Of a stretch of 64,000 bases of DNA, positions 44,189 through 62,049 are shown one piece after another. Under the pieces are notes generated by a model. It searched no databases, had not been told where the DNA came from, and saw only the letters and a program-made list of their open reading frames with translations. Location: NCBI GenBank assembly GCA_964187785.1, contig OZ076416.1, positions 47,988,001 through 48,052,000 of the forward strand, given 5' to 3'. The position numbers and the translations under genes were made by a program. Source of the stretch: Amphiscolops sp. MND2022. Its lineage: Eukaryota. Positions within the stretch are counted from its first letter, which is position 1. Each line of letters begins with the position of its first letter.

Positions 44189-47100
44189 TGGCGCTGCGAG
44201 CTGAAAATTCAGCACCTTCTTCGCCAACTTCATCGTCACACCTTGTCGGACTGCCGGTGTTCTGGAGTGATGCGGTTGAAAACCCTCCAATGGATTAGGA
44301 TAAGTGGTTTGACCTGTTTCAAGTGGCATTGATGGCCAAATATTCCATTTCAGTCACCGAATTGACGCGAGAAGCGAATCAGCAAAACCCAGGGTTCGTG
44401 CTCTTCTTGGGGATCTTGACGAAAATCATGCAATAGAAAAAGTAATTAGCATTCTATACTTATTACTGAGCGAACAAGCAAGAAAGCAGTTTATGGCACA
44501 CTGTGAGACTTAAAAGCTCAAGAACTTGTGCACTGATTGCTTTTGGAAAAAGAGGAACAGAACGCTGGACAGGCATCGATTTTTTTCAAGACACCAACAG
44601 CAAAGCGAATCATTATTTAAATTCTGGCATGCCCTAATGGATTGGCGGCTTTGTGTTATTTTGGGGAGATAATATCTATTATCCTAGTTCTGGACATGTT
44701 CATACTGCACATGAATACCAAAAAGGTGCAAGGAAAATTGTGCAGAGAGCCCAAGGAACCGGACCAGGCACTAGAATTTGCTATTGCCTTCGAGGAAGGA
44801 GTCAAACGACAAAAAACCTATGGCGCACCAGCCCCTGAGTCAACAACATCAACCATAAGAAGTGAACCGGTTTTCGCCGTGGAAAATGCTAACCTCAGGG
44901 ATTGCTATAGATGTGGGGTAGCGAACTTCACTATGGAACACGTGGATTTCTGCATGGCCACCAATCACCGATGTAAATTTTGTAAAATAGTAGGGCATCA
45001 GGAGAATTGCTGCAAAAAGAAGTTCCCTCAGCGGCAGAAAGATGATGCAGAGGCTGAAGAATCGTGACAACAAAAAAGGGATACGAAGAGTAAATTATAT
45101 TGAGGAATCCGAGGAAGAATCGGAAGAAGACGAAGACGAAGAGCAATTAGTACTGTGTGTAGACGGCGAGGGTTGCAAACCCTTCTACATGGAAGGAATG
45201 ATGTGCGGCAACTAATTTAAAGCGATTATCGATACTGGGTCGCCACATTCCATTTTTACCAAACGAGACTTGCAGAAAATTGTGGGAGATAGAAAAGTGG
45301 CGATCAGAGACATGATTCCGGGCGAACGCTACATTAATTACAACAAAAAACCATTAAATTTGTTTTGTTATCAGTTCGTACGACTTGAAGTTGCAGGAGT
45401 AACAGTATCAAAAGCCAGAGTTTTAGTAGCATCTAACTCAGAAAATCAATCATGGGCCGTGATTGGCTAGTTGTTCTACGCTACAAAATTACGCAGCCAA
45501 TAGAAGGAGGTGAGTGTAAAATAATTAAAAACAAAATGCAGGTTGTAAAGAATCCATTTTTGAAATAAGTCCCGAGGGAAAACAAAACCCCGAGGTACAG
45601 CAACTAGTGAGGGAATTTCCAAAATTGTTTGAACGAAAACGACGTGTGAAGAATTACGGAACTATAAGTAAAATGAAGGACGACGCGAGAATTACGCAGC
45701 AAAAGGGACGCCGCATTCCAATTCAATTACAAAACCAAGTAGACAATGAAATTAAAAAGTTGTTGAAGGAGGGCCATATTGAGAAAGTTGTTAAAGTCAA
45801 GACGATGTGTTTATTCAGCCTACGGTAATAACTGTGAAAAAGATAAGTCTGTGAAAATTGCCTTGGACGCAAGAGCGCTAAATCAATCATTAGCAAAAGA
45901 CAAATACCAAATGCCTAATTTAGATATTTTAATTGACTCGATCGCTAGAAGGGGAGGCGTGGTATTCCTCGGTAGACATGACGTACGCGTACAGGCAAAT
46001 TCCCCTACAAGAGCTAACAAGATGACGCTGCAATTTTCAAATAGTTAGGGGGGGAATCATCAGGTACTTATCGTTTCACAACTAGATTTTATGGCCTTAC
46101 CGTAATGCCAACAGAAATTTAAAAATTAAAGGACCTCACGTTAGCGAATGTAAATAGTGTATTTGTGTATACAGACGACGTGGTAATTGTACCAAAAGGA
46201 ACCAAGCAAGAACATTTGAACAAAGTGAGGGAAGTAATGAAAATTCTGGAAAAAGCGAAGTTGCAGCTGAAGGCCGAAAAATGCGTGATTGCACAAGAAA
46301 GTATTGAATGGCTCGGATATAAAATGACAAGAACGGGCACATCCCCAATTAATACAAAAGCCCAGGGAATAAGCGATAGGTTGAGACCAACCAACTTGAA
46401 ACAATTACGTTCATTCCTTGGAGCGGTTAATCACTTTAATAAATTCATACCGAATTTGGCAAGTATTAGTTTCCCATTTAGAACAAATTCGAAAAAAGAT
46501 AAGGAGTGGATATGGAATGAAGACCATGAAAATGCGCTTGTAAAATAAATGAACTAACACGAGTAGTAGAATTGTCGCATTTTAAAAGAAACCAAGAAAT
46601 ACGAATTATCTGCGACGCGAGCAGACAAGGTCTAGGTGCAGTTTTACAACAAAGTCAACCTAACGGAGAATGGAACCCGATCTGCTTTTTTGCATCTAGA
46701 TGTTTAACAGACTTCGAGGCGAAATATTCCATCAATGAGTTAGAATTATAAGCAATAATCTGGGCAGTAGAACATTTTAGAAATTATAGATATGGTTTAC
46801 AGTTAAATATACTTCCACACCATAAGGCATTTATGTCGGTACTAAAACCTAACAGGGGAAACGAAACTTTTCCAGCATGCTAACACGCTGGGTAGATAGT
46901 TTGCTCCCTTTCGATTTTGAGGTAGTACATGTCCCTGGTAGAACACTAGGAATGGCAGACTATGTATCAAGACATCCCACCGAACTTTGTGGATCATCCA
47001 TTAAAGCAGAAATCCTGTGGAATGAATGGTTGACTGTAAATAGCGTAATTAGCCTGAATGATGTTTTAGATGGCAGTGACGTAAGCAGCGAGAAAGGCAA

Positions 47101-48822
47101 GCCGGCGGAAAATGCCAACGAAGGGATTGGCATCAACCGCATAAATCAAGCAAGCCGACGACAGCCAATCAAATTGCAGAACGAACCTAATTCGCGGGAA
47201 TCAAATAAACGCCATTGTGGCAATATTGTTCAAAAGCGAAAGATGAGTCAATTAAATAATTCAATGAAAAGCTTTTACCGGAAAATTATTGCGCGGACAA
47301 ACTCATTCAACTAGTGTTAAAACTTGTAAAAATATACAATAAGACCGGAGTTACGAGGCTACCGTCCCCGTGGAGGGAAAAATTTCAAACATTCGCGCTC
47401 AACAGTCGCGGGTTTCTTTATATGGATAACCGACTGGTCATCCCGCAGGCCATGAGGCCTATGATAATGTGTTCCCTATATTACGGTCATCTCGGTCGGG
47501 ATGCCATGCTTGCTATGACCGAAGACATCTCGTGGCCTCGCATCCACCGTGAAGTTATTGACCAAGCACGGATGTGCGAACAGTGCCTTCAATCAGGTAA
47601 GAATTCAAAATACGTCCTGAAACAAAAACAAAAAGGGAAATTGCCGGAAATAATAGAACAAAATGAAGAAATTGCGTTAGATTTTGCGGGACCAATTCAA
47701 AATGCGAAAAAAGGTAATAAAGTACTTGTTAGTATCGATAGACCACTTTTCAGGATGGCCGGACGCAAAATTTCTTAATAGCCCGACAACGAAAAAGTCA
47801 TAGAATTTTTAAAACAATATTGTGCGCAGTACGGTGTACCTAAGAAAATACGTACGGACCATGGCACGGTGTTTGTAAGTGAGGCGTTTACACAATTCTG
47901 TAGACAATTTGGAATAGAGCACATAACCTGTCCTAATAGAGATCACAGAGGTAACGGAAAACTAGAGAGCTTGATTAGAACTATTAATGAACGAGTACGG
48001 GCTAATAAGCAGATCATTTTAAGCAATACGGTCTGAGATTTTATATTCGTTAAGGATAAGTAAGAAAAAGGACGGAAAGTCGCCGTTTGAAACCAAATGG
48101 GGAAAGAGCCAAATACGGTGAAATCAAATTTAGTGGGAAAGTATTTGGGTTTTTCAGCCCAAGATAACAGCGTACAGTTCCAGCCTGTAGACTTCCAAGA
48201 TGATTGCGACTCAACAGTTTTGGTACGTGAAAGAACGAAAGGTTCGAAACTCGAGCCAGACTTCGCGAGGAAATCACGAAAAGTAGCTGAGAATCCTTAT
48301 ACGATCACAGTATTACCAGGACCGTCAAAGACCCCAAAAGTCTCCTCAAAAAGGGATGTAGTGCAGGCATCCAAACAACAAAAGGAAAAATTCCAAAGAA
48401 TGGGAAAACGGGCGGTCATCGAAGAGCCGCTAACATCACGCGAAGCTGAGGTACACGCTAAAAAGAGGGGAAAACCAATAAAGTGGGGAAACCTAGCTAA
48501 CCCCGAATTAGCATTCGATCTGGAGATTGAAGCAAAACACCTCCATCATCAAAATCTCATCAAACCTGACAGTCAGTGAGGAAGCCCCGAAAAGCGTGCA
48601 AAGCGAAGAAGCCCCGAAAGGAGAGAAAGTAAAAGAAGAAAACGCCCCGAAAGAAAACAGCTTCCCGGAGAAGCCAGCACCCCTGTAAAGACCACGGTAT
48701 CCTGGCAAATAGAGAAGAAAGGACCAGTCCGTACATCGGAGAGGAAACACATGCCCCCAAAAAGATACGGAATCGACCTCATCACAAAGGAACAAGGAGG
48801 ACAAGAGAACAAAGAGAAGTAA
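44188..48822 (+). pseudogene. gag-pol polyprotein, disrupted by stops and frameshifts
   Basis: Twin zinc knuckles CYRCG..H..C / CKFC..GH..C (~44900-45015); protease IIDTGS (DTG at 45231); RT IALDARALN and YTDD (46168-46179); RNase H CDAS, ELEL, TRW, ADYVSRHP; integrase GHLG..CEQC, LDFAGP, RTDHG, GNGKLE; C-terminal PPKRYG. Confidence 0.92.
44189..44201 (+). promoter_or_regulatory. Primer-binding site, probably tRNA-Ser
   Basis: TGGCGCTGCGAGC directly abuts the LTR. It is complementary to a ...GCTCGCAGCG-CCA 3' end, resembling Ser(TGA/CGA) tRNA ends as I recall them. Confidence 0.7.
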
Positions 48823-53900: not shown

Positions 53901-56900
53901 TGAATGTCGCGAACCGTTAATACATGAGAGAAACCCGGAAACCTATTTTGCATAATACGGTATAATACTATAGTACTGGTGTGTAAAAGTGTTATAGAAG
54001 ATAGGTGGTCTCTAGCTACTTTGGTAGGTGGTGGAGTTGAACTGGCTGGCCAGGGTCTCCCGGGAGTGGTAGCGACAGGAGTTGCGTCTGCTGTTCACGG
54101 GTGTCGTTGCCAAAGAGGCCCCCAGCTCACTCAGCCCGCCCTGCTCCTGAAAACGACACACCAATTCTTATGATACGGCCAGTGTGCTTTGTAGGGACTG
54201 TAGGGTTGCATACCCCACGTATGACAGAGGGTGTGAATGTATGCATTATGTAAAAACCTGCATTTCGGGAAAGAATCCAACGGACGGTGAAGCCACGTAA
54301 GCACGTATTTAACTTATTCTAAGTTGTTCGCTGCGACCAATCTTTGAGGAGGTTTTGAAAATACAATTATAGAAATAAATAAATTACAAATCAAAGAGTG
54401 TCGATGAAAAAAATTTAGAAGAGTGACAATGCTTACCCATATTTGGTCGTGACTATCGAACCGAATTTCTAATCTGTGACCGAACGATAAAAGTAAGATG
54501 TTGAAAACTTTAAAATAAACGTTTTTAGAAAACGTTTCAAATGCCTCAAAAATCTAAATTTTCGTGCGATTGAAAAATTGATGGTATTTTGGTAGTAATC
54601 ATGAATACATACCAATTTGGCAAAATGACTTTTGCCAACTAGGACCTCTGATATCTGCTGTGGACGTGAATTTTTACCCATCACTATTCATTATTTCGAT
54701 TTTTTCAACTCACAGCTGGTCTTGCTTCAGCAGCTCTTTGAGCCCAAGTCTGGATGTCGTTCCACCATTTCTGCTGACTCATGTTGTCCCCAGAAGGACT
54801 GCACAGGTCATTGGAAGACACGTGATTGGTCGCAGAGGGTGACCTCACTTTGGTCAGCGAATTCTGATTGGACGCGTGCTCGTAGTACTCTGTGCCCAGG
54901 GCAGGGTTGGGAAAAAATCTGATTTTTTAAAATATTCAATTTAATCCATTTTTTAAATTAAAATCAAGATTTTTGATTTTAATCATGATTTCTTAAACTT
55001 TACTCAAAAAAGGGTTTGAAATCAAATTTCATTTAATTTTTTGTTTTAATGATGAAAAAAGCACAAAAAAGAACAAAAAGATATTCATTACAGTTCTAAA
55101 AATCACATCATGATCTGATTGTAATTCTATAAAAACAAAATATCAATTTTTAAACGTAAAAATTATCAACTAACCTCTTTGGAGTAAAGTTGACATATGA
55201 GTTGATTAAAATAAAAAATCCAAAATTATGATTGATTAAAATCTGATTAAAATCATTATTATAATCAAGTTGATTAAAATCGGCCAACCCTGGCCCGCGG
55301 AGTATGTCTTGGGGGTGTGTATCAAGGGCCAATAGAGCAGGAAAGACACTAGGGTGACGAAGAGGGAGACCCCACAGGAGCAGATCCACGTCATTGAGTG
55401 CACAAGAGACATCCCGTTTGGATACGTCATTAAGACCTAACAACCAAAACGTTATTATGAACTTCTTTGCATAAATATTCAGGCTCAAGAAACATGCTTC
55501 AAAATCTAATGAGCTGACCTGTAGCTAATTTGAATTTGAGCAGTAAAAACTCATAATACACTTTAATATTTTTCGGATTGGCACAAACGCAAAACGGTAA
55601 CGAAATATTACAACTTACTTTAAGCTGAAGCATTTTCCTGGGTTACCAAAACTGGAATAAATTCAAAAACTTTTAAAAACATTACAAAACACTTTTATTC
55701 TAGACTGAAAACAGAGGAGACACGGATAAATTATTCATACATACACGAAAAAAGTGAGAAAAAACGTACAAAGCTGTCTTGAAAGCAAATCATAGACTCA
55801 AAGTAAATGTGAACTAGATGCGCAGTAGCACAGCGATATTTTCGTATATCTGCTACTACTCCTTCAAAAAAGAATTCAGAAAATTACAAGTTCATGCAGA
55901 TATGCATATCCCTAGTTGAAGCTGCAGGAACTTTTTACATGCTGCAGGCATGCATGCAGGGTAATTTTTTATAAAACCTAGAAAATTCAGTGAACTTCAG
56001 TTGGTAAATCATGTACAATTACACTGCATTTTCCACTATTGTAATTAAAATTTGAAATAAATTACACTAGATTACCGACACGATCACTTTGTATTCACAC
56101 TTTGTTTCTCAACTACTCATCTGATGTGACCACCGCTTCTCAAATAGCACGCTAGACATGACGCTAACTTGCAGTTTATTATGAGACTGAAGATATTTTG
56201 CATTGATTTAGCGGTAAAATTGATAGCGCCTTATTTGCTTTCAAAATTACAACTGCTGCTTAATGAAACCTGCAAAACTTCAAGGCTTAAAATTGCCGCC
56301 AAAACTTTGACGAATCTTTCAAGCAGCTTGATAAAAGTTAATTATAACAGGCACAAATTTTCGCATGAAAGTTTCCGTAAGAGTTTTAGAAAATCATAAG
56401 AAAAGTTGCTGGCAACATTAAAGTACATGCAAAAAGTTCAAGCAGTTTCAACAAGGGATAGTACCAAAACAGCAACTCGAGAAGAAGATTCAGTGAACTT
56501 TATTTTTATAAGACATTTACATTTGTTCAACTTCAAAGTATACGAAACTTCGACACTGGTCAGAGTCGAACCCCACACTCTTCCTTGCAAAATCTATCAC
56601 AATTCGGACACAAGAGCTGATAATAATTAGAAATAACGTCAACAGTTCCGATATAGCGCATTTTCAGTCAGCGCTTTTCGAAGGAAAGAACCGACTATTG
56701 CAGTGACTTTTTCAAGACCAGCTAACTGGCACATTTTTAAAGGCACATTTCTATAAGCTGTATCTTAGTAACTTCTAGCTGCCATAGTGGCATAGTGGTA
56801 GAAACTGCCACTTGATATAGAGGTTAACTCGAATTTTCTGAGGTGCGGAGTACGGGTGTTCGAGTCTCGCACTATACCACCAAAAGTTTTTATGCATGCA

Positions 56901-59900
56901 ACAGTAGAGAGGCGAAAGGGTCCACTCCCCGTTGTGATTTTTTTCTGCTTTATGCGACTTTTTTCCGAAGCTTTTCCAATCGAAGTGTCCTCGAGATTTT
57001 TCGGCACGATTATATTTACCGAAGAATTTGAAAAAATTGAAAAAAATGAAAATTTTTTCGACGCAATTTCTTTTTTTGAGGTTTTCTGTGAGGTCCTAAT
57101 GGTGACCTTTTTGATTATTTTTCAGTCCTGTGGAAGTTATAGGAGTATTCCTAGAAAATGTTGCAAAAATGTTACGGTTTTTTCGGCACTGTGCGACTTG
57201 TTATCAGCAAAATATTTGTTTGGTCAAATGGTACCCCTTCACTTTCATAAGTGATTTCAGCCGAAAAACAACGACGTTTGGCGAGCTTAAAGCTCATCAT
57301 TCGGCACTATGAGATTTTTTCCAAAGAAAATACTTGTTATTAAAAATTTCTTTAAAGATCTGTTTTCTGTTTCCAGTTGGAAAAACTGTTCATTATTCTC
57401 ATGGGTCTCCCTTCGGGTTTTCTCTAGCACTGTAGATTTGATAACATTCTCACAATGCTGTCTCTTTGCATGTTTAAAAAACTTGGTTTTTGGGAACCTT
57501 GAGCGGGGCGCTGACTTGGGTCATTCCCGACTTGTTTCATTTTTCATCGAAAAAAGTTTCATAATAGAAAACAATACTATTATAGTTAAATTCGGAAAAA
57601 AGAGGTTAGACTCTGTTTAGATGCCAACTCCCGAAGGGACCAATTGGTGAAGAACACTTTTTAAAAGGAACACTTTGCCAAAACAATCGAACGAGGAAGC
57701 TTTCAGGCTAAAAAGATGTTTTTCAACTAAAAACATCAAACAAGACGAGAACGTCTAAAGTCGACTTTCCACTTCAAAAGGGGTAAAGTTTTAAAAATAT
57801 GATCAATGCGTTTTAAGGAAACTCTTAACAATATAAATACCCAAAGGGAATCTTTTGAACTCGGAAAAGGTTCTTCTCGAACAGAGAATACAAAAACAAT
57901 TGGGTTCAAAAACGGTTTTCGAATTTGTTCTGCAAAAATGACAGAGTCGAAAACAAATTTCCAACATGGACGTTCCGGTGCCAAACAGTTTCGAGGAGAC
58001 GGTAAAACTATGGAATCTACAAAGAGAGTGTCCTTTGACTTCTTGAGTATGCCGTAGACTGCAAGCTTTTATCTTGTAAAAAATTCCATTTCAGTGTGAG
58101 CTCTGTGGCATAGAGAAAAAACAGTTAGTGTTGATTTTATCCAAAGAGGACACTTTAGACTTGAGAATGCAGTTTTCTAACTAAACGAATGAAAAAATCA
58201 AAGAGAGTGGAAAGAAAAAAGTCGTGTGCAAAGAAGACCAAGGGGAACTCTTTGGTGTCCTTCAGTTGATAACACATAGTTTAAAATTTGAAAATCAAAA
58301 GGAACTCTTTGGCCACCCAGGATGCACTGTAGATCTTACGCTGACTCAAAAAGTGCACAAAAACTTTCTCAAAGAAGGTCCACAGTGTCAGAAAGAAAAC
58401 AGAGTGCCTTGGTCGCATCTACTTTTGTCGTCAGCAGGATTCGACCGCAACTATGCTAGTTTTCAAGCACTCGCGGCGGACATTCAGGCAATATTCAACT
58501 TTAGATTTTTTTTTCTTAGAAAAGCGAGAGATAACAAACTAATTGACTACCCGAGTCCCACGCAAAAAAAACTTTAATTCATGGAGCATGGCGCAGTGGT
58601 TAGAGCATTCGACGTGTATTGGAGTTGTACCAGGTTCGAAAGTATCTCAATCCACTATCATTGGGCCTTGAACAAGTCGTTCATCCGTAGGTTAGTGACA
58701 TTGCGATGTAAAAAAAAGACGCATTTGCCGGATAAAATCAAAATGAAAGAGCAAATATACTTCTGTGAACTTGAGCAAGTCAATTTGAAACCACTCTGCT
58801 TTAAGCCGACCATTGCTTGACCTTTTGGTTGCAAACATGGTATCATACCTTACTCGCGGAATTGGAGAAACAAATAATTGTTTTATACTTTTATTTTTAT
58901 TCATTCTGATACTTAAACATGAATGGACTATGACACGATAGGATAGAGACATGAAAACACATGCAGCTAAAAGAAGTTCCAAACATGTGGTAAAAAGCTT
59001 ACGTTATGAACCTGACCATCTTACAGTTAATTTCATGTATGGAAAAACAAGAGAGTTTTTTTTAAAACTGGGAATCAGAGACAGGCGGGACTTGGTGAAA
59101 AAATATATGAAGTATCTAATTCGGAGGTTTTACTCCAGCATATTCAAAACAAAATATTCAAAATATAATTTACTACATTGGTACAAACTTTACCTTTTCG
59201 GAATTGTGACGCAACACGTAGGACGTGAGGAGAGAAATGCTGATGAGCAGGTTGAGAGTGAGTAGAAGGAAGACGTACTTGGCAGAGGTCTTCTGGAAAC
59301 GGGGAAGCACAAACGGGCTGAACGATTCCAGAGAATTCAGAGCCACCGACAGCAGTTCTTTTTTGATACACTGCAATATCAAGCAAGAAACTGAGAATCC
59401 AACAATGCTTTGGAAAAAAAGTAATTCGTTCCTTAATTCTTAGGTCCGTTCCCGATTGCAAACTGCATGGTTTACTGTATAGGTTGGTACTTTGAAAATA
59501 CTTACTGCAAAAAGCTTAAGACAGCTAATGACACAGGTGAAAACATTTTTTTCTTGGGAAATGCATTCGACAAAACTATACTTTTTGTTTTGAATACTGT
59601 CCTGGTATTTCGAGGAACTTTGTAATCTGTATTTCAGAATTTATTACGCCATCTCAAAAACGGCCGAAAAACTTCCCTGGATAATTTCTGTAGCCTTGAC
59701 ACCGTTCTTTACCTTTCGCTTCACATTTTTCTGAAAATGCATTTTCGAAAATGAACAGCCAAAAACAGTTGTAATTCCGCGGAAAAAAATTTTAATCCAT
59801 AAAAATTGAAGAGTTCGCATTCTGTGATCACTTCGCATAGTAAATTTTCGAAGAGGACGTTTTCAGGAAAGTGTTAACGTCAAAATTTATAAATCTGAAT

Positions 59901-62049
59901 CAGAGGTACAAAGTTTGTCACAGGCATGTTTTGTTACGAACGGTGGTTTTCCAGCTATTGCATACTAAATTTCGGAAAATGTCAAAAAGCAAAACTGAGC
60001 GATATCAAATCTTGTAATTTTTGTTCGATTTCAAAACAAAAATACGCCTATAACTCTGATCGAAATCGGAGAAAGTTTCTTTCTTTTCCCGGGGACTTTT
60101 TCTGTCAATCGAGTATATATAAATTTAACTCAGTTTGAACTTTTTCGTCTGTAAAATCGAGTGTCTTTATTTTTTTGGTGCACTAGTGTATATGGAAAGC
60201 AAAGTGCTGTAACACAATTTATCGAAATTAAATGTAAAATAACTCGATGTATTTCACTAAGGTATTTATCATTAGTGGAAACTTGCCTTCTCAAAAGACT
60301 TTGCTTTGCGTCTGAAAACCATCCTGTCAGTTCTACCGTCCCTGTACCCTGGGCCAATCCACTCGAACACTGGAAAGTCATAGAGGTCACAAGTGTGCAT
60401 GTCAACCACAGTGACCCTGTTGACATACCAAGAGGTCAAGGGTTCACTTCTGGCTCTGAATGTGGACATGCATCTGGAATTGCGGTGACTGCCCCCACTG
60501 CCGAAGTAGGGCGGCTTGTCGTGCCAGAGGGACACTCGGGTAAGTTTGCCCAGAGATTCCCAGGTGCTGGAATGGTAAACTGATTCGAACTTGGAGAGTT
60601 ATAACGAGATCAGATAATTTTCTTTTCTGTTGACATCTTCAAGACTATTTTTCAAAACTTTTCTTAGCGTCAAGCTTTCTTTACAATTTGATAAGGGTTC
60701 TTGAATGTTGCTTTGCAGATCTGTTAGAAAACTGAATGACGAAAATGCTCGAAATTGGTTTGTATTTGTATCTTAGGTTATCAGTCTCTTCTTTGTGGAT
60801 ATTTCAAGGCAAATATGTTTTTAGATATTCGAAAAATTGAAGAAAAAAACATCAAAAAGGAACTTCTGATGTTCAGTAACCCCTATCAAACCACAAAAAA
60901 CTCAGTAGTCTTATCGCCCACAATTAACAATGCAAAAAATGAACGAACAATTTTAGAAACAAGCACATCGAAAATTTGAAATAAACAAATCTTAAATATT
61001 GTTCATATTACATGTTATTGCTGAATATATCTATGTACATGGTGGGGTGTTTGTAGAGATACACCTGTGTTACCTGATGATGAAGGTGGTGACGGATCCA
61101 GACTGGAAGCAGCTGACGTCATCGGAGAAGAGCTCCTTGGTCTCGGAAGTGCGGTGCTCCCCGTACAGCACACAAAACACCCTGTTTTTAGTCCCCGTGC
61201 CCCACATGTTGCCTGTCTCCACTGACAGGGAGTAACTAATAGCATCAAAAAACAACTTCACCAAAGTACTTAGCATTTCCCAAACAAGAGGTGGATTCTT
61301 AACTAGAGATGATTGATACGATTGTTCAAATGATCCTCAAGATCTTGACAAAATTGTTCCAAGAATCTTTTGGCAGAAATCCATCAAAGGTCAGTCCGGG
61401 TAACCCTTCCAAAATTTTCCCAGAACCCAAGGGCCCTTAAGCGAACCGGGATACTTTCCGTCTTCAAATATTTAAGCAACAACATATTTCAAGTGTCGAG
61501 CGTACTCTATAAACGTACGCCTACCAAAAGGCTCGAACCTTGCACAAATAGATCAAAAATTCAATAGAAATTGCCATTTTTACGAGTTTGTCGCTTTCAA
61601 TTTTAGACACTTTTCCCTTATAAAAATTTTTTAATTCCTCCATAATTTCGTACGCTACGACGCTATTTTTTTTTCGTTCTTCAAATTCTATAGAAGAAAC
61701 ACAAAAAAGCCGCTGAGAGATAAAAAGAATATTGTGGAATTGCATGCTTCTGACACAGAAGCTTAACTTGAAAAGTCCATTTCTAATGCGACATTTGTGG
61801 CTGACTGACCAATGGTAGTCGCGACAGTTGTTGTCCACGTGGTAGAGTATCTTGTCGATGCAGTCGTCCGGACTGACAGCAAGAACGACAATCTTGAAGC
61901 ATGCCATCACAGTCGCCCCCACAATGAACACCCCCACTGCCACTGCAAGGAGACGACCCACTCTGCACGAAAGTACAACAAAATAGAAACATTACACAAG
62001 AACACATACACCTGATGGATATCTTTTTCAAAGAAAGGTTATCTTCAAT
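50824..62049 (-). CDS. Polycystin-1 family (PKD1L/PKDREJ-like) gene, partial: 10 exons, ~499 aa (TM1, PLAT domain, further TM segments)
   Basis: Exons 62049-62012, 61962-61810, 61235-61074, 60566-60287, 59370-59194, 55436-55289, 54889-54714, 54146-54020, 53468-53318 and 50908-50824 join in frame with compatible phases. Motifs DN..DY, Y.LSVETG..GTGT...LYG, F.SGS..TF, LWHD, SWYV..V.V.D..T...Y.F...EW, DG match the PKD1-type PLAT domain. Confidence 0.85.
50992..51164. mobile_element. Tc1/mariner(pogo)-type MITE, 173 bp
   Basis: TIRs CAGTGGAAGTCGCTTA / TAAGCGGCTTCCACTG (15/16), flanked by TA on both sides (50990-50991, 51165-51166). Confidence 0.88.
51356..51696. mobile_element. CMC/EnSpm-like MITE, 341 bp, with subterminal and 30-bp internal repeats
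   Basis: TIRs CCCGTGCTGACA / TGTCAGTACGGG (11/12) and 2-bp TSD TG. Many AGGACT/AGTCCT motifs in both orientations. About three copies of a 30-bp unit (TCCTGGCAAGGACTTGGAATCCTTGAG..) at 51578-51670. Confidence 0.72.
51960..52150 (-). repeat. Old dispersed repeat, copy 2 (inverted)
   Basis: Reverse complement reads TGTGCGACTT...TTTTTGAGCCTTAAGCGGGGCACGGACTTGGGCCGTTCGCGGCTTG. Confidence 0.6.
52679..52868. repeat. Perfect 190-bp palindrome, no spacer
   Basis: 95-bp arms centred on TGA|TCA (52773/52774); every position I checked pairs, including homopolymer lengths. Confidence 0.95.
53318..53468 (-). CDS. PKD1-like exon: TM4 region (IPNSLLFISGFSLCLCLSLLSAVLSLL)
   Basis: ttttctccttag acceptor and AG|GTGAGT donor. 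Confidence 0.8.
54020..54146 (-). CDS. PKD1-like exon (EQGGLSELG...FNSTTYQ)
   Basis: ttttcag acceptor; weak donor AA|GTAGCT gives the phase required by the next exon; read-through hits TAG at 54012-54014. Confidence 0.62.
54714..54889 (-). CDS. PKD1-like exon: cytoplasmic loop (EYYEHASNQ...WWNDIQTW...RPA)
   Basis: Only one frame is open; cacag acceptor and GCT|GTGAGT donor. Confidence 0.7.
54902..55292. mobile_element. hAT-like MITE, 391 bp, coinciding with an intron
   Basis: TIRs CAGGGTTGG / CCAACCCTG; imperfect 8-bp TSD GCCCAGGG / GCCCGCGG (6/8); very AT-rich interior with ATTAAAAT/ATTTTAAT repeats. Confidence 0.82.
55289..55436 (-). CDS. PKD1-like exon: TM3 region (WICSCGVSLFVTLVSFLLYWPL)
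   Basis: ttag acceptor; the donor is inferred inside the MITE TIR (CAGG|GTTGG). Confidence 0.72.
56780..56880 (+). other. tRNA-like/SINE-head remnant
   Basis: A-box-like TGGCATAGTGG and B-box-like GTTCGAGTCTC; no convincing cloverleaf. Confidence 0.3.
57150..57535 (+). repeat. Old dispersed repeat, copy 3
   Basis: GCACTGTGCGACTT ... CCTTGAGCGGGGCGCTGACTTGGGTCATTCCCGACTTG. Confidence 0.55.
58583..58810 (+). mobile_element. tRNA-derived SINE (decayed)
   Basis: A box TGGCGCAGTGG and B box GGTTCGAAA, followed by a CCTTGAACAAGTC core-like motif; no intact cloverleaf. The 3' end is approximate. Confidence 0.6.
59194..59370 (-). CDS. PKD1-like exon: TM2 region (ELLSVALN...YVFLLLTLNLLISISLL)
   Basis: cag acceptor, AAG|GTAAAG donor, 177 nt. 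Confidence 0.8.
60287..60566 (-). CDS. PKD1-like exon: PLAT C-half (LGKLTRVSLWHD...SWYVNRVTVVD...EWIG...DGRTDR)
   Basis: ccag acceptor. The 3' end is most likely the GC donor AAG|GCAAGT; an in-phase GT alternative lies at 60319. Confidence 0.85.
61074..61235 (-). CDS. PKD1-like exon: PLAT N-half (YSLSVETGNMWGTGT...LYGEH...FQSGSVTTFII)
   Basis: tag acceptor, AG|GTAAC donor, PLAT motifs. Confidence 0.9.
61810..61962 (-). CDS. PKD1-like exon: TM1 and linker (VGRLLAVAVGVFIV...DNNCRDYH)
   Basis: Pyrimidine-rich cag acceptor and GTCAGT donor; hydrophobic helix followed by the DN motif that precedes PLAT. Confidence 0.8.
62012..62049 (-). CDS. PKD1-like exon (IEDNLSLKKISIR)
   Basis: cag acceptor, AG|GTGTAT donor, 38 nt; followed by a 49-nt intron; phase fits the next exon. 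Confidence 0.5.

What the first reader, a model, noticed from the sequence alone, without database searches (positions are those of the whole stretch)
54890..55292. Introner-like event: a hAT-type MITE that splices out with exact frame restoration
Seen: removing the 391-bp element plus one 8-bp TSD gives a continuous ORF, ...YSAG-T-EYYEH. With the element present, a donor inside the TIR (CAGG|GT, 55288) and an acceptor in flanking exon sequence (CACAG|, 54890) define a 399-nt intron, exactly element plus TSD. The spliced product is ...YSAG-Q-EYYEH, one substitution and no length change. The two TSD mismatches fall in the copy that would now be intronic or its exonic partner, consistent with relaxed constraint. 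Known: introners are non-autonomous DNA transposons that create introns by carrying one splice site and co-opting the other. Inference: recent intron gain in this gene.
Basis: partly seen in the sequence, partly recalled or inferred. Interest (0 to 1): 0.75.

Follow-up and report, generated by a model that had tools for sequence, protein, structure and literature searches.

The report
Transposon-split exon, possible new intron
A 391-base jumping-gene remnant sits inside a coding exon that a related organism has in one piece; it could be spliced out as a new intron without breaking the protein, but no RNA data exist to show that it is.

Summary
A 391-bp, 22% GC element (54902-55292) has perfect 9-bp inverted ends (CAGGGTTGG), clustered subterminal repeats and a 6/8 target duplication. 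It interrupts a minus-strand coding exon (55436-54714) of a PLAT-domain, polycystin-1-like membrane protein gene.

New here: a 1249-bp contig from a related organism (L001) carries the same four exons. The homologue of this exon is one uninterrupted 267-nt exon with the same borders, and the two halves abut at its residues 46|47. So the insertion is lineage-specific and hit coding sequence.

Contigs of the only public runs (DNA, one sample) show no empty site, and the alternative haplotype carries its own SNP inside the element. The insertion is therefore not brand new.

Splicing is untested because no RNA run exists. The donor AGG|GTTGGC is weak and lies in the hairpin stem, and a better donor lies inside the element.

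"Introner" is not shown: there is no second copy in the window, and reads show only a few partial look-alikes. The scan has flagged similar transposon-as-intron candidates elsewhere in this genome.

Verdict: a real insertion into an exon; intron status plausible (about 45%) but unproven.

The parts
54902..55292 (.). 391-bp non-coding DNA-transposon-like element (MITE), 21.7% GC
   Evidence: Stops in all three minus-strand frames. Subterminal arms pair at 72% over about 90 nt.
54902..54910 (+). left terminal inverted repeat CAGGGTTGG (terminus CAGGG fits YARNG)
   Evidence: (I20). YARNG motif as given in PMC3014272.
55284..55292 (+). right terminal inverted repeat CCAACCCTG; on the minus strand it reads CAGG|GTTGG and holds the proposed donor GT (55288-55287)
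54894..54901 (+). target-site duplication, left copy GCCCAGGG (on the minus strand it lies in the pyrimidine tract before the proposed acceptor)
55293..55300 (+). target-site duplication, right copy GCCCGCGG (coding: ...TCC GCG GGC on the minus strand)
55204..55281 (+). cluster of subterminal GATTAAAATC repeats (55204, 55234, 55245, 55272); inverted partners at 54956-54984
   Evidence: (D7, I13, I21-I23).
54890..55288 (-). proposed 399-nt GT..AG intron (AGG|GTTGGC ... CCCTGGGCACAG|AG); not verified
   Evidence: Sequence reading. Donor score, fold.
55289..55436 (-). 5' part of the interrupted exon (acceptor ttgttag|GTC; membrane-helix-like stretch; ...KTYSAG)
   Evidence: GC3 0.75. 41% identical to L001 exon residues 3-46.
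54714..54889 (-). 3' part of the interrupted exon (...EYYEHASNQNSLTK...KWWNDIQTWAQRAAEARPA, donor GCT|GTGAGT)
   Evidence: GC3 0.58. 45% identical to L001 exon residues 47-87.
59194..59370 (-). preceding exon (CIKKELLSVALN..., hydrophobic helix), 177 nt as in the relative
60287..60566 (-). PLAT-domain exon B, followed by a GC donor (AAG|GCAAGT)
61074..61235 (-). PLAT-domain exon A
   Evidence: PF01477, E 4e-05, 24.8 bits against a cut-off of 23.
54020..54146 (-). following exon (EQGGLSELGASLATTPVNSRRNSCRYHSRETLA...), open and conserved; its 3' end is not fixed

Best explanation
A hAT-like miniature transposon (391 bp, 9-bp inverted ends, 8-bp target duplication) inserted into a coding exon. 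The exon encodes a membrane helix and the loop after it, in a PLAT-domain, polycystin-1-like gene on the minus strand. This part is shown.

The insertion happened in this lineage, after the split from the organism behind contig L001. It is older than the two haplotypes of the sequenced individual.

Inferred: the allele is tolerated because the element is removed from the pre-mRNA as a 399-nt GT-AG intron.
- The transposon end supplies the donor (CAGG|GUUGGC).
- The reverse complement of the same end at the other side supplies the pyrimidine tract (UUUUUUCCCAACCCUG).
- The first AG of the host exon, 4 nt beyond the duplication, supplies the acceptor.
- The 4 nt of transposon end left in the exon replace the 4 nt of exon lost to the intron. 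Length and frame are kept, and one codon changes (ACA Thr to CAG Gln).
- The element's hairpin would bring the two sites together.
For: Insertion (shown):
- Inverted ends, duplication, subterminal repeats and AT-richness.
- The two exon halves are in one frame.
- Both halves carry the third-position GC excess of the PLAT exons in the proposed frame.
- The relative's contig L001 holds the homologous exon uninterrupted, with the same acceptor and donor positions. The two halves tile it end to end at residues 46|47.

The gene otherwise looks alive:
- Five consecutive exons are open and phase-compatible, with usable splice signals. The four that L001 covers are conserved with it.
- The one heterozygous exonic SNP (55305) is synonymous (plus codon reading).

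Not a private new mutation:
- Contigs of all four runs cross the left junction without a branch.
- No empty-site joint is listed.
- The alternative haplotype has its own SNP inside the element, at 55231.

Splice model:
- The GT is the only one near the 5' end, and the AG is the first after a strong pyrimidine tract.
- 399 = 3n.
- The resulting exon pieces of 148 and 176 nt are of ordinary size.
- Donors off consensus at +3 seem to be used in the homologous gene of the relative (AAG|GTTACA and AAA|GTCTGG, inferred by homology).

Precedent: maize Ds1, a roughly 400-bp hAT element, is spliced from exons using sites within 35 bp of its ends (PMC5432752, PMC3260210).
Against: - There is no RNA evidence at all. 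The only runs that hold the locus are four DNA-like runs of one sample.
- The donor AGG|GTTGGC matches the usual consensus only at -3, -1, +1, +2 and +5. It scores about zero on a rough home-made matrix, whereas GAG|GTTAGT inside the element (55174) scores better; use of that site would include an in-frame stop.
- In the predicted fold (z = -4.8) the donor and the pyrimidine tract are paired with each other in a GC-rich stem, which could hide both.
- Frame preservation for one chosen site pair has a 1 in 3 chance.
- No other copy of the element could be examined, so nothing shows that this family is spliced elsewhere.
Confidence: 0.45

Rival explanations
1. Disabling insertion. The element is not removed correctly: it is read through to the stop 18 codons in, or spliced from the stronger internal donor. 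This copy of a polycystin-1-like gene is then a null or strongly reduced allele, common or fixed because the gene is one of several paralogues and dispensable. That would make it a pseudogene at an early stage.
For: - The proposed donor is weak and a better one lies inside the element.
- Donor and pyrimidine tract are buried in the hairpin stem.
- Read-through meets 8 stops.
- With so little time elapsed, intact neighbouring exons do not exclude a young pseudogene.
Against: - The insertion is on both haplotypes, with a SNP of its own.
- The target duplication has already drifted at two places, yet all five exons seen are open and keep their splice signals.
- The only exonic SNP is synonymous.
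- An in-frame GT..AG solution exists.
Confidence: 0.33
2. The frame is rescued, but not at the reader's sites. Either the whole 723-nt exon is skipped, or another cryptic pair is used. Without the element the exon is 324 nt and phase 0-0, so skipping keeps the frame but drops the membrane helix. One alternative pair is donor CCT|GTGGGG at 55375 with the same acceptor: 486 nt, also 3n.
For: - The exon is symmetric and a multiple of three (coordinates 55436-54714 less 399).
- A 723-nt exon with an AT-rich hairpin core is a poor unit for exon definition.
- The alternative donor scores no worse than the proposed one.
Against: - Skipping or the 486-nt deletion would remove a hydrophobic helix that is conserved with the relative and would invert the topology of all that follows.
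- The proposed pair is the only one that restores the full length.
Confidence: 0.15
3. No transposon at all: an ordinary old intron whose ends happen to look like inverted repeats with a duplication, or an assembly artefact.
For: - The inverted ends are only 9 bp and the duplication is imperfect.
- Shuffles give 0.57 comparable structures per 26 kb if base composition of the ends is ignored.
- No full second copy was seen.
Against: - The homologue has continuous coding sequence exactly there, while all other intron positions are shared.
- No shuffle gave a GC-rich-ended hit.
- Subterminal repeats are clustered.
- Parts of the element recur in other contigs of the genome, and the locus is held unchanged by contigs of four runs.
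Confidence: 0.04

Closest known systems
Maize Ds1 (Ac/Ds, hAT superfamily) spliced from exon sequences (Wessler 1991, as cited in PMC5432752; family described in PMC3260210)
   Same: Both are roughly 400-bp AT-rich non-autonomous elements with an 8-bp duplication and ends beginning C/TAGGG. Both sit in an exon, with donor and acceptor sites within a few tens of bases of the element ends that allow removal from the pre-mRNA.
   Different: Ds1 splicing is shown by cDNA, is usually imprecise or alternative, and belongs to unstable mutant alleles in a plant. Here the host is an animal-type genome, nothing is shown at the RNA level, the allele is on both haplotypes, and the predicted product keeps the exact length.
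Introners / introner elements (Micromonas, Aureococcus, dinoflagellates, fungi; surveys PMC9860276 and PMC12130899, review PMC11282704)
   Same: Both are MITE-like DNA elements with inverted ends and a duplication. The element gives one splice site and the other comes from host or duplicated sequence, so the intron is about element plus duplication. The intron is absent in relatives.
   Different: Introners are defined as families with many near-identical intron copies in unrelated genes (at least four in PMC9860276), checked with RNA-seq. Here there is one copy, low copy number by the reads, and no RNA. The acceptor AG lies 4 nt beyond the duplication, not in it. PMC9860276 found introners in only two animal groups.
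MITE-derived non-canonical introns of the tunicate Fritillaria borealis (summarised in PMC11282704)
   Same: An animal in which inverted-repeat elements inserted in genes are removed as introns, with ends that pair in the RNA.
   Different: Those introns have non-canonical borders and need an altered spliceosome. The present candidate has canonical GT..AG.
Ordinary transposon knock-out allele (for example the MITE-split polycystin-like gene noted in this genome, s1-172873)
   Same: A small transposon in a coding exon of a gene of the same family, in the same genome.
   Different: That case was reported as heterozygous with an intact second allele. This one shows no empty allele in the sample and has an in-frame splice solution.

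Membership tests
Introner (intron-generating transposon family) | Transposon hallmarks at the intron borders (inverted ends and/or target duplication) | tested here: met
   9/9 inverted ends, 6/8 duplication of 8 bp, subterminal repeats.
Introner (intron-generating transposon family) | Several (at least 4 in PMC9860276) similar copies that are introns of unrelated genes | tested here: inconclusive
   No second copy in the 64-kb window. In the DNA runs only a few other contigs match parts of the element at 90% or more. The rest of the genome could not be searched.
Introner (intron-generating transposon family) | Shown to be spliced from mRNA | not testable with these tools
   No RNA run holds the locus; the four holders are DNA-like runs of one sample. 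No translated transcript was found in the protein collections.
Introner (intron-generating transposon family) | Element carries one splice site, the other is made by the duplication or flank | tested here: inconclusive
   The sequence allows it: GT at bases 5-6 of the end, and the first host AG 4 nt beyond the duplication. The donor is weak and use is unproven.
Introner (intron-generating transposon family) | Intron absent at the homologous position in relatives | tested here: met
   L001:829-1095 is one uninterrupted exon; the two halves abut at residues 46|47. Only one relative was available, and orthology versus paralogy is not settled.
hAT-superfamily non-autonomous element | 8-bp target-site duplication | tested here: met
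   GCCCAGGG / GCCCGCGG, 6/8. Feature as in PMC3014272 and PMC3260210.
hAT-superfamily non-autonomous element | Terminal motif YARNG | tested here: met
   CAGGG at both ends. Ac/Ds ends are C/TAGGGATGAAA.
hAT-superfamily non-autonomous element | An autonomous partner with a hAT transposase and the same ends | not testable with these tools
   None in the window; the genome is not searchable here.
MITE (miniature inverted-repeat element) | Small, AT-rich, no coding capacity, hairpin-forming | tested here: met
   391 bp, 21.7% GC, 8-19 stops per minus-strand frame. Fold -94 kcal/mol, z -4.8.
MITE (miniature inverted-repeat element) | High copy number | tested here: not met
   Summed contig depth over the element is only about 2-7 times the single-copy flanks at 90% likeness or more. 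The neighbouring MITE at 55910-56457 reaches more than a thousand times. Older, more diverged copies would be missed.
Polycystin-1-like (PLAT-domain multi-pass membrane protein) gene | PLAT domain | tested here: met
   PF01477, E 4e-05 (24.8 bits, cut-off 23) for exon A and E 1e-3 for exon B.
Polycystin-1-like (PLAT-domain multi-pass membrane protein) gene | Membrane helix before PLAT and several after it; REJ/GPS and channel-like domains | tested here: inconclusive
   Hydrophobic stretches were read in the ORF at 61524-61961 and in the exons at 59194-59370 and 55289-55436. No topology tool was run, and no REJ, GPS or PKD_channel match was sought beyond these exons.

The most novel reading that the evidence does not exclude
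This MITE-laden animal-type genome is gaining introns now, through several unrelated small DNA transposons. In this case a hAT-type end (CAGG|GTTGG) acts as donor on one side, and its reverse complement acts as pyrimidine tract on the other, whichever way the element lands. Insertions into exons can then survive as exact-length introns. Together with the other candidates flagged in this genome, that would make it one of very few animals with ongoing transposon-driven intron gain.
Probability: 0.25. Interest if true: 0.7.

Novelty: new member of a known kind. Interest (0 to 1): 0.45.

Why it matters
How new spliceosomal introns arise is an old question. The best-supported route is insertion of small transposons that can be spliced out, and it has been documented mostly in algae, fungi and protists. 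PMC9860276 found it in only two animal groups.

This is a young case in an animal-type genome. The pre-insertion state is preserved in a relative, the element's ends are still intact, and a precise in-frame splice prediction exists. It would be a clean test object: one RT-PCR decides between intron birth and gene death.

If the several candidates flagged in this genome all splice, the genome would be a natural system for studying what makes an exonic insertion survivable. If they do not, the finding is an ordinary transposon knock-out in a member of a multigene family.

Tried and rejected
- **RNA evidence.** The look-up of sequencing runs returned only four DNA-like runs of one sample. Read laying therefore showed genomic contigs only.
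- **Homologues of the exon pieces, searched apart.** The word search with the 73-aa ORF holding the 3' half found nothing. The word search with the 66-aa ORF holding the 5' half found nothing. The exhaustive HMMER search with the 60-aa 3' half gave three hits, all to repeat or TPR proteins and all spurious. The homologue was reached only indirectly, through PLAT exon B.
- **Exact look-up** of the 64-aa read-through ORF: not on record.
- **Metagenome scans.** A 32-nt exon word found nothing. The relative's exon returned only the same contig.
- **Solved structures** for the PLAT exons gave only weak generic PLAT hits.
- **Papers** naming the relative's assembly: none.
- **Earlier findings by sequence:** blank.
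- **Rejected readings.**
  - A longer 12-bp inverted end (I20) leaves no duplication.
  - A pre-existing intron into which the element jumped is excluded, because coding sequence abuts the element on both sides and the relative has none there.
  - The AG at 54919 as acceptor gives 370 nt and is out of frame.
- **Caveat.** The donor matrix is a rough one from general knowledge, not trained on this genome.

Full report
**What is there**

- A 391-bp block (54902-55292) of 21.7% GC lies between two stretches of 52-54% GC.
- It begins with CAGGGTTGG and ends with the exact reverse complement.
- It is flanked by GCCCAGGG and GCCCGCGG, an 8-bp direct repeat with two adjacent mismatches.
- On the minus strand the upstream flank translates to ...LYWPLIHTPKTYSAG and the downstream flank to TEYYEHASNQNSLTK...KWWNDIQTWAQRAAEARP.
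- The two flanks are in the same frame, because 391 + 8 = 399 = 3 x 133.
- Read-through hits eight stops, the first after 18 codons.

**Is it more than chance**

- In the 26 kb of the window that is not satellite, this is the only perfect 9-bp inverted repeat, 100-800 bp apart, with a >=6/8 flanking direct repeat.
- Locally shuffled sequence gives 0.57 such structures on average, but none in 60 shuffles with GC-rich ends.
- All four exact occurrences of GATTAAAATC in the whole window lie in the element. Three plus a near copy lie within 90 bp of one end, and the inverted partner lies near the other. This is the pattern of subterminal transposase-binding repeats.
- The two arms pair (72% over about 90 nt). 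As RNA, the unit folds to -94 kcal/mol, with z = -4.8 against shuffles.
- The 8-bp duplication and the CAGGG terminus are the structural marks given for hAT elements (PMC3014272; Ac/Ds ends C/TAGGGATGAAA, PMC3260210). No transposase partner could be sought.

**The host gene**

Pfam finds the two halves of a PLAT domain in minus-strand exons at 61235-61074 and 60566-60287. Reading onward gives three more exons:
- 59370-59194 (CIKKELLSVALN... with a hydrophobic helix);
- the interrupted exon 55436-54714 (acceptor ttgttag|GTC, donor GCT|GTGAGT);
- an exon from 54146.

Exon A ends two bases into a codon that exon B completes. The later four exons join in phase 0. A hydrophobic stretch precedes the PLAT domain. 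A membrane helix, then PLAT, then further helices is the layout of polycystin-1-like proteins; that layout comes from general knowledge and only the PLAT domain is demonstrated here. In the proposed frame both halves of the interrupted exon show the third-position GC excess of the PLAT exons (0.75 and 0.58, against 0.79 and 0.63).

**The key new evidence**

Searches with the exon pieces themselves found nothing usable. The word search with PLAT exon B found one 94-aa product, 66% identical. It comes from a 1249-bp contig of assembly GCA_013332895.1, fetched as L001. The same contig also sits in the metagenome collection.

That short contig holds the homologues of four of the exons, separated by introns of only 60, 57 and 61 nt. 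The homologue of the interrupted exon is L001:829-1095, a single open 267-nt exon with acceptor and donor at the corresponding places.
- The 5' half of the window's exon aligns to its residues 3-46.
- The 3' half aligns to residues 47-87.
- The two halves therefore abut, with two extra residues (Ala-Gly) on the window's side.

So a relative has continuous coding sequence where the element sits, while the three other intron positions that the contig covers are shared. Two caveats apply: there is only one relative, and it is not known whether it is an orthologue or a paralogue, or what organism it is.

**Age and zygosity**

The only public runs with this sequence are four DNA-like runs of one sample, probably the assembled individual. 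Their contigs show two haplotypes around the locus: seven SNPs and a 3-bp deletion in the downstream intron, plus further SNPs upstream.
- In all four runs one contig runs from 53500 across the left junction to 55287 without a branch.
- No joint skipping the element is listed.
- One run's contig carries an A>G at 55231 inside the element at single-copy depth.

The element is thus on both haplotypes and has had time to acquire its own polymorphism. Together with the two mismatches in the duplication, this argues against a very recent event. The one heterozygous site inside the exon (55305) is a synonymous ACA/ACC change.

Summed contig depth over the element is only about 2-7 times that of the flanks, and one other contig matches about 100 nt of it. 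This is a low-copy family at 90% likeness or more, unlike the element at 55910-56457, whose depth is thousands of times higher.

**Would it splice**

In favour:
- The proposed donor is the only GT near the 5' end.
- The acceptor is the first AG after a good pyrimidine tract that the transposon end itself supplies (UUUUUUCCCAACCCUGCCCUGGGCACAG|).
- The interval is 3n.
- The product keeps its length, with ACA (Thr, matching Thr in the relative) replaced by CAG (Gln).
- The two resulting exons (148 and 176 nt) are of ordinary size.
- The homologous gene of the relative appears to use off-consensus donors (AAG|GTTACA and AAA|GTCTGG, inferred from equal exon lengths and phases).

Against:
- AGG|GTTGGC matches the consensus at few positions and scores near zero on a rough matrix.
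- A better donor lies inside the element (GAG|GTTAGT at 55174). Its use would keep an in-frame stop.
- In the predicted fold the donor and the pyrimidine tract pair with each other.
- Frame preservation for a chosen pair is a 1 in 3 event.
- The exon without the element is 324 nt and phase 0-0, so exon skipping would also keep the frame.
- No RNA evidence can be had with the tools.

**Comparison with what is known**

The closest precedent is maize Ds1, a roughly 400-bp hAT element that is spliced from exons through sites within 35 bp of its ends (PMC5432752; PMC3260210).

Introners, however, are families with many intron copies verified by RNA-seq (at least four per family in PMC9860276; manual RNA-seq checks in PMC12130899). 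Neither criterion could be met here, so this is at most an introner-like single event.

The scan has flagged comparable candidates elsewhere in this genome (s1-151654, s1-151731, s1-175791). It has also flagged a MITE-split polycystin-like gene read as a heterozygous null (s1-172873). I did not check any of these.

**Verdict**

My estimates are about 45% for splicing as proposed, about 33% for a disabling insertion and about 15% for rescue by other sites or exon skipping.

Noticed in passing
window:1-36500: Two long tandem arrays. One runs from 1 to about 20 kb with a 621-624-bp unit and higher-order periods of 1244, 1900 and 2488. The other runs from about 20 to 36.5 kb with a roughly 575-bp unit. 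GC and negative GC skew are very even across both.
   Followed up: partly
window:44600-48600 (+): Decayed LTR-type retroelement. A reverse-transcriptase fragment (46165-46545, RVT_1) and an integrase zinc-binding domain (47314-47775) sit in broken ORFs.
   Followed up: partly
window:55910-56457: A 548-bp element with imperfect inverted ends of about 22 bp (CCCTAGTTGAAGCTGCAGGAAC...). Its summed contig depth in the DNA runs is 1e5-8e5 against 24-72 for single-copy flanks. This is the hyper-abundant small transposon of this genome, and it sits in the intron just upstream of the studied exon.
   Followed up: partly
window:60281-60290 (-) and L001:530-540: The intron after PLAT exon B starts with GC (AAG|GCAAGT) where the relative has GT (AAG|GTTACA). 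This is a GT-to-GC donor change at a conserved intron position.
   Followed up: no
L001:535-1156 versus window:54147-60286: The same three introns are 60, 57 and 61 nt in the relative, but about 0.9, 3.8 and 0.57 kb here. The introns have swollen 10- to 60-fold. A repeat was seen only in the 3.8-kb one (the element at 55910-56457); the content of the other two was not examined.
   Followed up: partly
window:60440-60520 (-) and L001:310-390: The PLAT domain carries an insertion of about 25 residues between WHDK and SWYVNR. It is shared with the relative, so it is a family feature and not damage.
   Followed up: no
window:51311-51707: A short tandem repeat that reads as repeated peptide units (SPCQDxSRIP on the minus strand, LESLSxPGKD on the plus strand) within a GC-richer island. 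Its nature is unknown.
   Followed up: no
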